Positions 17,784-22,180 of a stretch of DNA of 64,000 nt are shown here, one piece after another. Positions within the stretch are counted from its first letter, which is position 1; every line of letters starts with the position of its first letter. The translations under genes and the position numbers were made by a program. Origin of the DNA: Guillardia theta CCMP2712 (taxonomy: Eukaryota; Protista; Cryptophyta); assembly GCF_000315625.1 (NCBI RefSeq), contig NW_005434649.1, positions 62,001 to 126,000 of the forward strand, written 5' to 3'. The notes under the pieces were generated by a model. The model saw only the letters and a list, made by a program, of their open reading frames with translations, was not told the origin of the DNA and ran no database searches.

Positions 17784-18465
17784 GTTGTTTGTATTCGTTA
17801 CCACGATGAAAGCATGCGATATGATTCACTGCTCAGATGTGTGAGGGGAAGAAGCACTGAGATCAAGCTCATGCCGATCTTGGAGTGTGGACATACCTCT
17901 CCCTGCTCTACTCCTCCTTCCAGCATGCCTTCGCGCCTGGACTACTCATATTTCAACTGCTACCCGCCATTTCCCAATAATTTACTTATCTATAACTACC
18001 TCGCCTCAGAACAAACGATAGAAGACCAAAAAAGGCAGCAGCAATTTATTAGTGAATGTTCAGAGTCTTCGGAGTGCATCTAGAAAATAGATGGCGATAG
18101 TTCGGCTAAGATGCTTGAGAATCTTCTTCTGAGCAAGCTGATAGTTGTGACCAAGAGCTATGTCGTCATGACAAACACCCACAAACACGTTTCTCACGAT
18201 TCGCAAGAATTTCTTTGGCCTCTTTGTTCGAATCCTTGACATCTGTCTTAAACCTACCATCCTGGTATCTTCACGTTGGGACTCGCCTTCTTACCCTTGT
18301 TTGGAGACGGTTGACTGCGGGGAGGAGGAGGAGGAGGAGGAGGAGAGTCTCGATGAACATCTTCAAGGTCTTTGTCATCCAGCGTCTGCAGAAGGAAACA
18401 GTTAGATCTAAGGAGAAGTTGATTGGAGGAGAACCAGGCGAGGAGGGATATCGAGACGAACTTTT

Positions 18466-21400
18466 TCAGAGGGAACTTTCCACCCAGACCTTGATTTGGC
18501 TAAAGCAAGGGGATGAGTCAGAAACGAGCAAGTTCAGCTGGGCACGCAAACCTTCGTCCTTATCCTCGGAAGTCCAGGAGGGCAGCTTTCGTCGCCCTTT
18601 GTTGCTCTTCGCTGATTTCACCTTTTCCCTGTCCGTCTTCTCTTCATGTGAAAATCTAGGAGGAGCTTTCTTCTTCTTCTTCTTATCATCATCATCATCA
18701 TTGTCTGCTTGCTTCGCCTTGAACTTCTCCTCCGCCCTTTCATCAGGGAATGCAGGTGGGGCCGAGTATTTGGACGAGCCGCGGACACTTTTCTGCGAGC
18801 TCTTCGGCGGTTCAAACTTTGACTTGGATCGAACTTGAAAGGATGACGACTGAGAAGGCTGGTGAACGCTCGAACGTGCAGCATCCTCCTGTAAGGTATC
18901 CCTCTTCGCTGCGGCATTATGATCTGTCCCAGCATCGTGCAGTATGTGATGGTTGTGTACTGCGCCTTCCATCACGAACGCATCGTACATCATGCGCAAC
19001 CCCGAGATGAAATTCGACGCCCATCTCGCACTGTCAAAGGCAGCAGACTTGATAGCTGACCTTTGCATCGCCTGTTTCAAGGATCTCAACGTCTTTCGCC
19101 CCTTCAGCGCGAAGTGTTGAGCAAGCCTGACATAGTCCTGGTCGTTCCTAGCGATGAAGAGATCGCCGATGCCTGACGCCAGGCTCAGGCTCAGACTCAC
19201 CCGCGATGCCATCGACTCCCCAGGAGCAGAGATGATCGGCAGCCCTGCAAAGAGAGCGTCCGCTGCTGTCCCATGTGCCGCGTACGGCCTTGTATCCACG
19301 AAGAGATCACAGTTCGCCTTAGACGCGACGTGCCATTTTTCCTCAAAGAAGGTAGTGAAAATCAGTTTATCGGAGGGGATGCCTGACTGCTTGGCGTATC
19401 GTAGGAGAGATTGCTTGCCAGCTTCATTCCACGAGAGAAGCCAGAGCTTAGAATCAGGAACCTGACCCAACAAGTGCATCCAGAGTTGCCAAACCTTGGG
19501 TGTTATCTTGTAGAATTGGTTGAAGTTGCACAGGATGAACGAGTCGATCGCATCTGCAGGGAAGAACTCTGGCTTGCGCGAGTTCGATCCAGATGACTTC
19601 ATGAAGTATGACCCCCCTGCCAACTCCGCACGACTGGGCCAGGAGGAAGGGTCGAGCTCAGCAAGGTGTGCATAGAGACTGTCATGGCCGTTGTAGTGAT
19701 AGCTGTGAGGCATGTAAACCAGCCTCTCCACGTAAAACTCCGAGAATTCAGGAGGGATGACTTTCCGGTCCGCAACGATTCCGTGATGCTCAGCTATGCC
19801 TGTGGTGCCGGGGAATCCTTTGAAGCTCAGCTGGATAGGAGCAGGGGAGAGGATGAAGATCTCGTTGATCAAGGGCGCTGAAGTCCAACCGTCCAGGTTG
19901 ATCAGCACATGAGGCTGCTCGCGGTTGATGGCCGAGGCGGTTTCATAGAAGGCGGTAGAGCTCAGGTCCAGATACCCTCCCTTGCATTCAGCTTTCATCT
20001 TCCGATGCCATGACAGAGTTTCCTCGCTATCAACTCCTTCCCTCGGGTTCGGATTCAGAGAAAAGCATATCAGGGACACTTTAGAAGGGTCATGCGCTCG
20101 GAAGGCATAAACCATGTCCTTTCCCACTGGCCTGTCACGCAACTCTATTGAGACGTAACCCACTCTCAGTACTCCATCTGTCATGGGTAAAGGATTCAAT
20201 GGAAAACGCTGAAAATTCCTCACAAAAGTTCGTGCTTCCTGCCCATGAGCCTCGGCGATATGCCGCAGTACATTGAGCGACAATTCGTACGATAGGGACT
20301 CTAGAGGATTCGGGCAGATTGTGACGTCATATTCTCGCCGCCGACTCTTGGGCTGCCCTGGTTTACGAGTTGGGACATAGGTTCCTTTCTTCTTCATGAT
20401 GTCTGGTATGCCATACTGCCACATCCTTTCAAGATCATCCTTGTACTCCTCAAAATCCGTCCAATCACACCTGAAGAACATTAGGCAGTCATTGCTGCAC
20501 AGAGAGAGAGAGAGAGGGAAGGGGGTCAGGTGGGGGGTAACTTGGGTGGGGAGAGGAGAGAGAGAGAGAGAGAGAGAGAGCTTACAGTTTTCGCATGTCA
20601 AGATGAAGTGTACACTTGTAGTCTTGCCTGTTGGGATCAAGCTTCATGGCAAGTTTGATGGCATTTACGGCGAAGTCATATTGAGATACAGCCGAATAAG
20701 CTTCGCCCAGATTAAAGTATCCATCGGCATAGGTACCATCGAGAGAAACAGAATTCTTAAGATATTTGATCGCTAACTGCTGGGCTGTATGATTGAAGCG
20801 ATGGTGTCTGACCAGAAGGTTTCCGATGTTATTCGAGTATCCAGCTTCGTTCGGGTTAATGTTTGCTGCAGCTGTGTAGGCTTCTTGCGCTTCATCATAT
20901 TTCCCAATGCGCACAAAGGCATTCCCCATCCCGCAATAGCAATCAGCATGCAATGGCTCCCTGTGGATGCATTTCATATACTCAGCGATGGCTTCTTGGT
21001 TCTTGTCTTGCTTGAACAGAAGGATGGCCAGCGTTTTATAGTTGTCAGGATCCTCAGGCTGGAGCTGCAGCACCTTGTGCATCATCTCTGTTGCCTTGAC
21101 CACGTTCCCTGTTTCAGCAAAGAGCGTCGCAAGATTGAACATGGCGACCGAGTGGTCCTGCTGAAGCTCAAGGCATTTTTCCCATCGAAACTTGGCGTCG
21201 TCGAGCCTTCCCGCCTGCAAGTGTGCCATGCCGGCATGGTATTGGGCATCAGGGTTGTCGTATGCGAGGTCCGCGACCTCCTCGAAGATCTCTGCTGCAT
21301 GTACATGATCACCTTGTTCTCTGTATGCATTAGCCACGCTGAAGAGACGATTCGCCTCTTCTCTTCGCGCTCTTTCCTTCTCAGACAGCAGTTCTCCCTC

Positions 21401-21529
21401 CTGACCGTCTACCACTGCCCACATGCTCGTGATGCACAAGAGGAGAGCGATTGAGACACGCATGCTTGTTCGCATGCTTGTTCTCGCAGACTTCTGCCAT
21501 TGCTCCACCATCTTCCTCCTCGGCGCCAT
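18466..21529 (-). CDS. TPR + GT41 O-GlcNAc transferase (OGT/SECRET AGENT-type)-like protein with N-terminal signal peptide; 3' end may splice further
   Basis: Exon 1 has ~8 TPRs. Intron 20585-20471 joins RKL|CDW (cf. OGT IVCDW). Exon 2 has LRVGYVS, INLDGWTS...NEIFILSPAPIQLSFKGFPGTTG, ERLVYMPHSY, LCNFNQFYKITP, DLFVDTRPYAAHGTAADALFAGLP and MASRVS. Confidence 0.92.
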
Positions 21530-22180
21530 CGCCCTCGCTATCGATCCGCCATGCAATCCTTCCAAGGAAAAGATCTCGCGCTTTTACTCAACTCAAGCAC
21601 GGTACAAATCGCCGTTGGACTAGAATCGGACGCAGGTTCCGGCCCGCCCGGCCGGTGGGCGGGCCCGGGCCGGGCGGGTGACGGAATACAAGTTTGTTAG
21701 ACTTGTACTAGTCCAAAGTCACGCAGATATCACATCGACCTTAGTTGTTACAAGACAGTTTTTGCTCAAGACCGAGTTTAATGCACACAAAACCAGAATT
21801 GAGGAGCACATGAGAGAAACCCAAGCATCCAGACCGTACATGCGAGGACCTTAGTAAGACGGCTAGGAAAGCCCTCTCTTCGCTACATTGGCCGCCTCGA
21901 AACATGTAAGTCGTCTTGGTTTACAGGAGAGTTTTTGTTAACTTGGCGCTATCGGACTCAGTGGCACGGCTGGCATACTATGCTCCATCAGCGGGCCCAC
22001 TGGGAGTCGGTACAGGATGAGGGTTCAAGGGCCGTTGGTTCTCTCAGTCTTTTCTCTTCTCGCCGTATGGCCTGTGCGACAGTTCAGACTAGAATGATCG
22101 GGGGGGAAGGTACCCGACAAGACTACTCTAAACCTTTCCGATACGTTCTAATTAATCCGACTATTATTTGAATGCTGCTA

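What the first reader, a model, noticed from the sequence alone, without database searches (positions are those of the whole stretch)
18466..21529. OGT-type GT41 glycosyltransferase with an apparent secretory signal peptide
Seen: MRVSIALLLCITSMWAVVDG|QEGELL precedes the TPRs. There is no Phe at +1 and the following sequence is acidic, so it does not look like a plastid transit peptide. Established: OGT, SEC and SPY (GT41) are nucleocytoplasmic, and animal luminal O-GlcNAc is made by the unrelated EOGT (GT61). The catalytic Lys motif (NFNQFYK) is intact, but the OGT GNHP motif reads RDRPVG (His to Arg). Inference: an ER/Golgi or periplastid GT41 pathway, possibly with different acceptor chemistry.
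Basis: partly seen in the sequence, partly recalled or inferred. Interest (0 to 1): 0.7.

Follow-up and report, generated by a model that had tools for sequence, protein, structure and literature searches.

The report
Cryptophyte GT41 transferase with signal peptide
An expressed gene of the alga Guillardia theta encodes an O-GlcNAc-transferase-like enzyme that, unlike its well-studied cytoplasmic relatives, begins with a conserved secretion signal and has changed sugar-pocket residues, so it probably glycosylates proteins inside the secretory system; such cases were already counted in a published table but never studied.

Summary
The minus-strand gene (Guillardia theta) has 4 exons and encodes 1019 aa. 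It ends at 18254, not 18466, because two short 3' introns were missed. Transcript contigs from three studies carry all three splice joints and reach 21547-21554, so the hydrophobic N-terminus is in the mRNA.

All five orthologue lineages with a complete N-terminus have a signal-peptide-like start of unrelated sequence. None of about 115 other GT41 hits does. AlphaFold leaves residues 1-45 outside a confident 7-TPR domain.

The catalytic domain is most like animal OGT in sequence and fold. The whole clade has Arg at human-OGT His498, Gly at Thr921, and Tyr at Cys917. Cys917 is the position published as setting donor-sugar size, which argues against GlcNAc.

Best reading: a luminal (ER/secretory) TPR-GT41 glycosyltransferase with an unknown donor sugar. 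A periplastid location is not excluded.

Novelty is moderate:
- A 2018 CAZyme table lists 8 of 60 G. theta GT41 proteins as predicted secreted.
- I saw four more such paralogues.
- This scan flagged others on other DNA of this genome (s1-433009, s1-431818, s1-445779).
- Both public models of this gene lack the signal peptide.

The parts
21404..21529 (-). Signal-peptide-like N-terminus, codons 1-42. Basic n-region 21458-21529 (net +6), 16-residue hydrophobic h-region 21410-21457, then Asp-Gly before the putative cleavage site.
   Evidence: pLDDT is below 50 for residues 1-45. A hydrophobic core is present in 5 orthologue lineages.
21511..21513 (-). Second in-frame ATG (MVEQ...), the first start codon shared with the close relative. 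ATG 21529 reads AGG in that relative.
   Evidence: DNA alignment with metagenome contig L039. P0134 starts here.
21530..21625 (-). Conserved 5' flank and short 5' UTR. Transcript contigs end at 21547, 21550 and 21554. In-frame stop at 21584-21586. A 4-codon out-of-frame uORF starts with the ATG at 21550-21552.
   Evidence: The extension of the X1 contig beyond 21554 maps to another genomic contig, so it is chimeric.
20630..21382 (-). TPR domain, residues 50-300: seven TPRs plus a capping helix.
   Evidence: Pfam TPR_1, TPR_2 and others. AlphaFold gives 14 to 15 paired helices with pLDDT above 90.
20786..20794 (-). The only N-x-S/T sequon of the protein (Asn246-His-Thr), inside TPR6.
   Evidence: N-x-T is kept in 12 of 12 clade sequences with a variable middle residue. 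This is weak evidence, see Tried and rejected.
20471..20585 (-). Intron 1 (115 nt, GT..AG, CT-repeat rich).
   Evidence: Contig pieces 18552-20470 and 20588-21554 in X1, X2 and X5. Reading frame checked.
18925..20469 (-). GT41 catalytic domain (residues 316-830), starting with the CDWTDF junction helix. No metazoan-type intervening domain.
   Evidence: PF13844 E 2.6e-66. Human OGT E 4e-59. AlphaFold two-lobe model. Foldseek best hits are Drosophila and human OGT.
20332..20373 (-). Clade-specific basic loop (PTRKPG..KSRRRE, residues 348-361), absent from animal OGT.
   Evidence: Alignment. Low-confidence loop in the model, exon-2 residues 31-42.
20131..20133 (-). Arg428 at the position of human OGT His498 (within RDRPVG, 20122-20139).
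   Evidence: Arg in all clade members. His in all other sampled GT41 proteins except one G. theta paralogue (Gt_L031).
19507..19527 (-). NFNQFYK: equivalents of human OGT Asn838, Gln839, Tyr841 and Lys842 are all kept.
19282..19284 (-). Tyr711 at the position of human OGT Cys917 / Arabidopsis SPY Tyr744. It lies within DTRPYAAHGTAAD (19258-19296), which also holds the His920 equivalent, Gly715 in place of Thr921, and the Thr922 and Asp925 equivalents.
   Evidence: Published role of this position: PMC9715652.
18500..18551 (-). Intron 2 (52 nt, GT..AG).
   Evidence: Joint 18499|18552 in contigs of X1, X2 and X5.
18386..18434 (-). Intron 3 (49 nt, GT..AG).
   Evidence: Joint 18385|18435 in contigs of X1, X2 and X5.
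18254..18924 (-). C-terminal tail, residues 831-1019, interrupted by introns 2 and 3. It is Lys/Ser/Pro-rich and predicted disordered. Conserved islands are SSKY.APPAF, PSW, SGW.VPS.K and the terminal VKIP[GS]W. Stop codon at 18254-18256.
   Evidence: pLDDT is near 30. The tail is identical to transcript-derived P0001.

Best explanation
The gene encodes a TPR-GT41 glycosyltransferase that enters the ER through a cleavable N-terminal signal peptide and works in the lumen of the endomembrane system. That could be the ER (including the chloroplast ER), the Golgi, or a secreted location.

Shown here:
- The gene is expressed and spliced as modelled.
- The hydrophobic start is part of the mRNA and of the reading frame.
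- It is conserved as a feature, not as a sequence, across a cryptophyte-specific clade.
- It is not part of the folded TPR domain.
- The catalytic domain keeps the nucleotide-phosphate-binding set: equivalents of human OGT Gln839, Tyr841, Lys842, His901, His920, Thr922 and Asp925.

Inferred:
- After translocation, the seven TPRs hold extended segments of secretory or cell-surface proteins over the active site, and the GT-B domain transfers a single sugar to Ser/Thr.
- Tyr711 occupies the position of human OGT Cys917. By the published SPY/OGT comparison this narrows the sugar pocket, so the donor is more likely a sugar smaller than GlcNAc (fucose or a plain hexose).
- Arg428 in place of His498, in the peptide groove, and Gly715 in place of Thr921 point to altered substrate contacts rather than to a dead enzyme.
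For: Gene model and expression:
- Three splice joints appear in contigs from three studies, which reach 21547-21554.
- P0001 is an exact substring of the model.
- There is an in-frame stop upstream, and four ATGs precede the hydrophobic core.

Signal peptide:
- The h-region is 12-17 residues, followed by small residues, in G. theta/P0134, P0004/P0137, P0006, P0008 and P0135/P0145.
- None of about 115 other GT41 hits passes the same rule.
- Seven of 11 amino-acid differences from the 96%-identical relative fall in the first 47 residues, with no indel. This is the usual pattern for a signal peptide.
- Residues 1-45 have pLDDT below 50, next to a TPR domain above 90.
- The mature start has 4 acidic residues in its first 10. 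In diatoms this pattern keeps proteins in the ER (PMC3017844).

Enzyme:
- PF13844 at 224 bits; human OGT E 4e-59 against SPY 6e-23; Foldseek best hits are OGT.
- Motif table.
- Role of the Cys917/Tyr744 position and status of His498: PMC9715652. H498A/R637A lie in the peptide groove: PMC2556091.

Context:
- Four other G. theta TPR-GT41 paralogues have a signal-peptide-like start in the same open frame.
- 8 of 60 G. theta GT41 proteins are predicted secreted in PMC6260743.
Against: - No signal-peptide predictor could be run, and there is no localisation or activity data.
- The raw RNA run gave almost no reads on the gene, so the exact transcription start is not mapped.
- The n-region is unusually long (18-24 residues) and basic in G. 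theta, and similarly long in two other lineages. This also fits a signal anchor.
- There is no KDEL/HDEL-type retention signal.
- The long Lys-rich, Pro-rich disordered tail looks more like a nucleocytoplasmic protein than a luminal one.
- Most orthologues have a short basic Ser/Ala-rich stretch after the hydrophobic core that could act as a minimal transit-peptide-like signal.
- The donor inference rests on one published single-residue rule and on a sequence alignment.
Confidence: 0.6

Rival explanations
1. The same protein is a type II membrane protein. The basic 18-24-residue N-terminus stays in the cytosol, the hydrophobic segment is an uncleaved signal anchor, and the TPR and catalytic domains face the Golgi or ER lumen, as in classical Golgi glycosyltransferases.
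For: The n-region is long and strongly basic (net +6) and contains an RRK motif in G. theta. P0137 and P0145 also have long basic n-regions. Charge asymmetry places the N-terminus in the cytosol.
Against: The hydrophobic cores are only 12-17 residues, which is short for a membrane span. Each is followed within a few residues by small residues that fit the -3/-1 rule. P0006 and P0008 have very short n-regions. ATG 21529 is not conserved in the close relative.
Confidence: 0.15
2. The N-terminus is a bipartite signal that carries the enzyme across the periplastid membrane into the periplastidal compartment. That compartment is the remnant cytosol of the red-algal endosymbiont, which holds the nucleomorph. 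There the enzyme would act like a cytosolic OGT/SPY-type regulator.
For: All named clade members are plastid-bearing cryptophytes: Guillardia, Hanusia, Chroomonas. Four of five orthologue lineages have a short basic, Ser/Ala/Thr-rich stretch after the hydrophobic core. In diatoms, import across the periplastid membrane tolerates short and even neutral transit-peptide-like regions (PMC3017844). The plastid-lacking relative Goniomonas has 0 of 88 GT41 proteins predicted secreted, against 8 of 60 in G. theta. A nucleocytoplasmic-looking disordered tail would fit a cytosol-like compartment.
Against: In G. theta the first 10 mature residues carry 4 acidic and 1 basic residue. In the diatom tests that pattern kept reporters in the ER. 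Only 4-15 residues separate the hydrophobic core from the conserved start of the TPR domain. No aromatic residue sits at +1.
Confidence: 0.12
3. The hydrophobic segment is not used as a targeting signal. Translation or transcription starts further downstream (for example at Met36, as in the JGI model), or the segment is simply tolerated, and the protein is nucleocytoplasmic like other GT41 enzymes.
For: The JGI model starts at Met36 and the UniProt model at residue 130. The Lys-rich tail resembles nuclear proteins. The raw RNA run gave no information on the 5' end.
Against: Contigs from three studies extend upstream of all four earlier ATGs. Ribosomes would have to skip four in-frame ATGs, two of them in a good context. 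The hydrophobic start is kept in five lineages although the region evolves fast.
Confidence: 0.08
4. The basic N-terminus plus hydrophobic segment is a bipartite mitochondrial signal. It would anchor the enzyme in the inner membrane or intermembrane space, comparable to the mitochondrial isoform of human OGT (own knowledge).
For: Residues 1-24 are Arg/Lys/Ser/Thr-rich with a single acidic residue.
Against: Orthologues P0006, P0008 and P0135 have only 1-6 residues before a Leu/Ala/Val-rich core, which is typical of ER signal peptides and not of presequences.
Confidence: 0.05

Closest known systems
Metazoan OGT and plant SEC (GT41 protein O-GlcNAc transferases)
   Same: TPR array joined by a CDW helix to a two-lobe GT-B catalytic domain. 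These are the best sequence match (E 4e-59) and fold match. The NFNQ.YK lysine motif and the equivalents of His558, His901, His920, Thr922 and Asp925 are kept. There is no metazoan intervening domain, as in plant SEC (SEC part: own knowledge).
   Different: It has a signal-peptide-like start, only 7 TPRs, Arg for His498, Tyr for Cys917, Gly for Thr921, a basic loop after the junction helix, and a 189-residue disordered tail. In the tree the canonical G. theta SEC-like gene (C41:247814-248803), not this clade, groups with animal OGT.
SPINDLY (GT41 protein O-fucosyltransferase)
   Same: Tyr at the pocket position (AtSPY Tyr744), which excludes GlcNAc. No His-type base is needed, since SPY has Leu at the His498 position (PMC9715652).
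   Different: The sequence and fold match is much weaker (E 6e-23, C-terminal lobe only; rank 45 and below). This protein keeps Tyr841 where SPY has Ala. SPY is nucleocytoplasmic.
Predicted secreted GT41 proteins in protist CAZyme and secretome tables
   Same: G. theta: 8 of 60 GT41 proteins predicted secreted (PMC6260743). GT41 also appears in predicted secretomes of oomycetes (PMC4316629) and thraustochytrids (PMC6050695), and a signal-peptide-bearing GT41 in a pelagophyte (PMC11375080). Four further G. theta paralogues have such starts.
   Different: Those are table entries with no gene-level description, conservation analysis or function. This gene's public models are truncated at the N-terminus, so it was probably not among the 8.
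EOGT (GT61), the animal luminal O-GlcNAc transferase
   Same: It would be a functional analogue: a single-sugar O-glycosylation of secretory proteins in the ER lumen (own knowledge).
   Different: Unrelated family and fold, with no TPRs. Only PF13844 and TPR families match here.
TMTC1-4 (ER O-mannosyltransferases with TPRs)
   Same: They are precedent for TPR repeats used with a protein O-glycosyltransferase in the ER (PMC7001481, listed; the luminal orientation of the TPRs is own knowledge).
   Different: They are multi-pass GT-C enzymes that use a lipid-linked donor, not soluble GT-B enzymes that use a nucleotide sugar.

Membership tests
GT41 (Pfam PF13844 Glyco_transf_41) | Profile match over the curated cut-off covering both catalytic lobes | tested here: met
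   224.4 bits against a cut-off of 25, two stretches. Own-genome scan matches at C25:81012-81584 and C25:81657-82307.
GT41 (Pfam PF13844 Glyco_transf_41) | Two-lobe GT-B fold closest to solved GT41 structures | tested here: met
   AlphaFold model of exon 2 is confident over residues 1-516. The top 50 Foldseek hits are all GT41: OGT, XcOGT, TtOGT, SPY.
GT41 (Pfam PF13844 Glyco_transf_41) | N-terminal TPR superhelix fused to the catalytic domain | tested here: met
   TPR families. Seven TPRs with pLDDT above 90. CDWTDF junction aligned to animal OGT.
GT41 (Pfam PF13844 Glyco_transf_41) | Essential lysine (human OGT Lys842, SPY Lys665) | tested here: met
   Lys636 in NFNQFYK.
OGT/SEC, protein O-GlcNAc transferase proper | Small residue (Cys917 in human OGT) that leaves room for the N-acetyl sugar | tested here: not met
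   Tyr711 throughout the clade. Only animal OGT and the G. theta SEC-like paralogue have Cys. Rule from PMC9715652.
OGT/SEC, protein O-GlcNAc transferase proper | His at human OGT position 498 (GNHP) | tested here: not met
   Arg428.
OGT/SEC, protein O-GlcNAc transferase proper | Branches with canonical OGT/SEC in a family tree | tested here: inconclusive
   It falls inside a starred set (97) with animal OGT and most G. theta paralogues, apart from bacterial-type GT41. The SEC-like paralogue, not this clade, joins animal OGT (91). The clade sits on a long stem. This was a quick tree without plant or red-algal sequences.
OGT/SEC, protein O-GlcNAc transferase proper | Transfers GlcNAc from UDP-GlcNAc to Ser/Thr | not testable with these tools
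   Needs an enzyme assay.
SPY, protein O-fucosyltransferase | Tyr at AtSPY position 744, plus Leu and Ala at the positions of human OGT His498 and Tyr841 | tested here: not met
   The Tyr is present, but the other two positions are Arg428 and Tyr635. The SPY match is far weaker than the OGT match.
Sec-type cleavable signal peptide | Basic n-region, hydrophobic h-region of about 7-15 or more residues, small residues at -3/-1 | tested here: met
   Tested by inspection and a simple hydropathy rule. The h-region is 16 residues (mean Kyte-Doolittle 2.74 over the best 10), with Val-Asp-Gly before Gln43. The orthologues behave the same way.
Sec-type cleavable signal peptide | Call by a trained predictor (SignalP, DeepTMHMM), and actual cleavage or translocation | not testable with these tools
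   No such predictor was available and there are no experimental data.
Cryptophyte bipartite plastid or periplastid targeting signal | Signal peptide followed by a transit-peptide-like region that is non-acidic, with an aromatic residue at +1 for the stroma | tested here: not met
   In G. theta, +1 is Gln and 4 of the first 10 residues are acidic. The orthologues have short basic stretches, so for them the test is inconclusive.
EOGT (GT61) | GT61 catalytic domain | tested here: not met
   Only PF13844 and TPR families match.

The most novel reading that the evidence does not exclude
The clade is imported into the periplastidal compartment of cryptophytes. This would give the remnant cytosol and nucleomorph of the red-algal endosymbiont its own OGT/SPY-like protein glycosylation system, encoded in the host nucleus and retargeted by a signal peptide plus a minimal transit-like stretch.
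Probability: 0.12. Interest if true: 0.8.

Novelty: new variant of a known kind. Interest (0 to 1): 0.5.

Why it matters
All characterised GT41 enzymes (OGT, SEC, SPY, the bacterial HMW1C type) act in a cytoplasm-like compartment. Luminal single-sugar O-glycosylation is done by unrelated families.

This is a conserved, expressed, signal-peptide-bearing GT41 clade with an intact nucleotide-binding set but a remodelled sugar pocket and peptide groove. It would be a concrete handle for testing whether GT41 enzymes also work inside the secretory pathway, or in the periplastid space of complex algae. It could also show which sugar they use and on which proteins.

The gene also shows how truncated gene models hide targeting signals. 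Both public models of this gene lack the signal peptide. The massive GT41 expansion of cryptomonads (60-88 copies) is so far unexplained, and this gene is one tractable entry point into it.

Tried and rejected
1. Sequon depletion as a sign of luminal life. The protein has 1 N-x-S/T sequon against 4.7 expected (P 0.04), but cytosolic animal OGT also has 1 against 6.5 expected. Rejected. The 12 of 12 conservation of that single sequon stays as a weak hint only.
2. Conserved cysteines as disulfide evidence. Most are shared with cytosolic OGT. Uninformative.
3. Raw RNA reads (X19) for the 5' end. Almost no reads fell on the gene in the 6% of the run that was read.
4. The 83-letter extension of the X1 contig beyond 21554, tested as a possible upstream exon. 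It maps to another genomic contig (C6:1100879), so the contig is chimeric.
5. Rfam scan of the highly covered element upstream: no match.
6. Protein-atlas search with P0004: only generic GT41 clusters, no help on taxonomy.
7. Census of all GT41 loci. The N-terminus of the nearest paralogue (L021) could not be read because of many introns.
8. The joined, spliced 1019-residue protein was not sent to any search or folding tool. Exons were searched and folded separately by reference. It was used only inside scripts for alignment and coordinates.
9. Not run: the large representative-protein search (the claim does not rest on absence of relatives) and complex prediction (no partner is proposed).
Full report
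**Organism and gene model**

The window comes from Guillardia theta. The catalytic exon is 100% identical to UniRef A0A7S4PJS0_GUITH (P0001), and the partial NCBI model GUITHDRAFT_69463 (P0003) also covers it, at 95% identity over 70% of the query.

The gene lies on the minus strand. Two long open frames (21565-20582 and 20640-18466) are joined by a 115-nt GT..AG intron (20471-20585), which restores the junction ...MRKL|CDWTDF typical of OGT.

Logan contigs from three runs of three different studies (X1, X2, X5) carry this junction. They also carry two further joints, 18499|18552 and 18385|18435.

The spliced CDS has 4 exons:
- 21529-20586
- 20470-18552
- 18499-18435
- 18385-18254

It encodes 1019 residues and stops at 18254-18256. 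The transcript-derived protein P0001 is an exact substring of this model, residues 130-1019.

Neither public model contains the N-terminus. P0003 starts at Met36 and P0001 at residue 130.

**Is the hydrophobic N-terminus in the message and in the frame?**

The three transcript contigs reach 21554, 21550 and 21547, upstream of ATG 21529. The 83 extra letters of the X1 contig map to another genomic contig, so they are a chimeric join and not an upstream exon.

An in-frame stop lies at 21584-21586. Four in-frame ATGs (21529, 21511, 21475, 21463) precede the hydrophobic core.

A metagenome contig from a very close relative (L039, protein P0134, 96% identical) has AGG in place of ATG 21529 and ATA in place of ATG 21475. 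It keeps ATG 21511 and ATG 21463. About 100 nt of 5' flank are conserved. The signal-coding stretch has about 13 substitutions and no indel.

Seven of the 11 amino-acid differences between the two proteins fall in the first 47 residues. This region evolves fast but stays in frame and stays hydrophobic.

The one run of raw RNA reads (X19) gave practically no reads on the gene, so the exact transcription start remains unmapped.

**Is it a signal peptide?**

Residues 1-24 are basic (net +6). Residues 25-40 form an uncharged hydrophobic run of 16 residues. Val-Asp-Gly then precedes Gln43.

Every orthologue lineage with a complete N-terminus has a hydrophobic core of 12-17 residues followed by small residues. 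The sequences of these cores are unrelated. The lineages are G. theta/P0134, P0004/P0137, P0006, P0008 and P0135/P0145. Only P0005 lacks the core, and it is probably truncated.

With the same simple rule, none of the roughly 115 other GT41 proteins retrieved has such a start.

AlphaFold, run on exon 1 with an alignment of the orthologues, gives pLDDT below 50 for residues 1-45. Residues 50-300 form a confident superhelix of seven TPRs. The hydrophobic segment is therefore not a TPR helix.

No trained signal-peptide predictor was available, so the call rests on anatomy and conservation.

**Where does the protein go after the ER membrane?**

There is no aromatic residue at +1. The first 10 mature residues of the G. 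theta protein hold 4 acidic residues and 1 basic residue. In the diatom reporter work of Felsner et al., acidic residues at this place kept reporters in the ER, and ER residents such as BiP show the same pattern (PMC3017844). That favours the ER or secretory lumen for G. theta.

However, the other four lineages have 4-15 mostly basic, Ser/Ala/Thr-rich residues between the core and the conserved start of the TPR domain. The same paper shows that passage across the periplastid membrane tolerates very short and neutral signals.

All named members of the clade are plastid-bearing cryptophytes: Guillardia, Hanusia phi and Chroomonas sp. CCMP1168. A periplastid location therefore stays open as a minority reading.

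No KDEL/HDEL-type ending is present. The protein ends in a conserved VKIP[GS]W.

**The enzyme part**

Pfam gives PF13844 at 224 bits.

The best solved relatives by sequence are:
- human OGT, E 4e-59, both lobes
- Drosophila OGT
- Xanthomonas XcOGT, E 4e-34
- Thermobaculum OGT
- Arabidopsis SPY, E 6e-23, C-terminal lobe only

An AlphaFold model of exon 2 is confident over residues 316-831 of the protein. It has a floppy clade-specific basic loop (residues about 346-357) and a disordered tail. Its Foldseek neighbours come in the same order: OGT, then XcOGT, then TtOGT, then SPY.

In a quick maximum-likelihood tree the clade is monophyletic (support 100). It lies inside a supported set (97) that holds animal OGT and most G. 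theta paralogues, apart from bacterial-type GT41. It sits on a long stem. The canonical SEC-like paralogue (C41:247814-248803), not this clade, joins animal OGT. The tree lacks plant and red-algal sequences and should be read cautiously.

**Active-site residues**

Residues kept, in human OGT numbering, are Asn838, Gln839, Tyr841, Lys842 (Lys636 here), His558, His901, His920, Thr922 and Asp925.

Residues changed in the whole clade:
- His498 to Arg428
- Thr921 to Gly715
- Cys917 to Tyr711
- Lys898 and Arg904 are not aligned to like residues

In the motif table, the His498 position is His in all other sampled GT41 proteins except one G. theta paralogue.

The literature changes what the His-to-Arg substitution means. 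His498 was once a candidate base. It is now considered too far from the acceptor hydroxyl, the alpha-phosphate is the proposed base, and active SPY has Leu at this position (PMC9715652). H498A/R637A lie in the peptide groove and abolish activity in human OGT (PMC2556091).

The same SPY paper argues that the residue at Cys917/Tyr744 sets the size of the sugar pocket. Cys is found in the true O-GlcNAc transferases. Tyr or Phe is found in SPY (fucose), in HMW1C (glucose), and in XcOGT and TtOGT, which show little or no O-GlcNAc activity.

By that rule this clade, with Tyr711, is unlikely to be an efficient O-GlcNAc transferase. This is an inference from one published rule and a sequence alignment.

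**Family context and prior knowledge**

The G. theta genome gives 83 six-frame matches to PF13844, amounting to roughly 45-50 loci.

I inspected 20 other loci. Four (on C12, C7, C1 and C129) have a signal-peptide-like start in the same uninterrupted open frame as their TPRs and GT41 domain. A fifth is doubtful. They fall in different parts of the tree, so the feature is not confined to one lineage.

This agrees with Table 2 of Cenci et al. 2018, which lists GT41 as 88 (0 predicted secreted) in Goniomonas avonlea and 60 (8 predicted secreted) in G. theta, without comment (PMC6260743).

GT41 entries also appear in predicted secretomes of oomycetes (PMC4316629) and thraustochytrids (PMC6050695). 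A signal-peptide-bearing GT41 is mentioned for a pelagophyte (PMC11375080).

I found no paper that describes or tests any such enzyme.

This scan itself has flagged signal-bearing GT41 genes on other DNA of this genome (s1-433009, s1-431818, s1-445779). I could not map these notes to my loci.

**Verdict**

Entry into the ER is well supported by expression, conservation and structure prediction. The final compartment, the topology (cleaved or anchored), the donor sugar and the acceptors remain open.

The thing is a new, conserved variant within a known family. The general phenomenon, predicted secreted GT41 proteins in protists, has already been tabulated, which tempers the novelty.

Steps left out by rule: the joined spliced protein was never sent to a search or folding tool. 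Exons were handled separately by reference.

Noticed in passing
window 21679-21991: A dispersed repeat of about 310 bp lies directly upstream of the gene. The genome holds more than 50 scored copies (637 candidates) at 80-86% identity, and part-copies at 99% on C269 and C17. RNA-derived contigs and reads cover it at depths of 10^3 to 4x10^4, with fixed differences from this copy. Reads show a poly(A) junction at 21759 on the minus strand. There is no Rfam match. The close relative's contig L039 does not align here.
   Followed up: partly
window 21536-21552, minus strand: A four-codon out-of-frame upstream ORF (ATG GCG GAT CGA TAG) sits just 5' of the start codon and is identical in the close relative L039. 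Transcript contigs end at 21547-21554, so whether it is in the mRNA is unclear.
   Followed up: no
L026 (C12:531574-532877), L027 (C7:802053-803351), L030 (C1:82995-83561), L037 (C129:79628-81404): Four other G. theta TPR-GT41 paralogues have a signal-peptide-like N-terminus in the same open frame as their TPRs and catalytic domain. L030 groups with bacterial-type GT41 in the tree.
   Followed up: partly
L018 (G000:C41:247814-248803): This looks like the canonical SEC/OGT orthologue of G. theta. It is the only paralogue sampled with Cys at the human OGT Cys917 position, it carries NFNQLYKIDP, and it groups with animal OGT.
   Followed up: partly
L025 (G000:C28:263978-265060): Another paralogue also has Arg at the His498 position (motif NARPVG), so this substitution arose or was kept outside the clade studied here.
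   Followed up: no
L019, L020, L024 (C23:329203-330561, C24:664177-665532, C24:794450-795612): A tight group of paralogues has FC(R/N)LGR in place of FNQ.YK, so the catalytic lysine is replaced. L019 shows a PHD-like Cys/His pattern upstream.
   Followed up: no
window 20332-20373 (residues 348-361): A clade-specific, conserved basic loop (..KPG..KSRRRE) lies between the junction helix and the N-terminal catalytic lobe and is predicted flexible. In a secretory protein a run of three Arg could be a dibasic processing site. This is pure speculation.
   Followed up: no
window 18254-18924: The disordered tail carries short islands conserved between G. theta, Hanusia and P0004 (SSKY.APPAF, PSW, SGW.VPS.K and the terminal VKIP[GS]W). 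They may be docking or sorting motifs of unknown function.
   Followed up: no
public models P0003 (GUITHDRAFT_69463) and P0001 (A0A7S4PJS0): Both public protein models of this gene are truncated at the N-terminus. The JGI model also skips internal segments. Published signal-peptide censuses based on these models will have missed this gene.
   Followed up: yes
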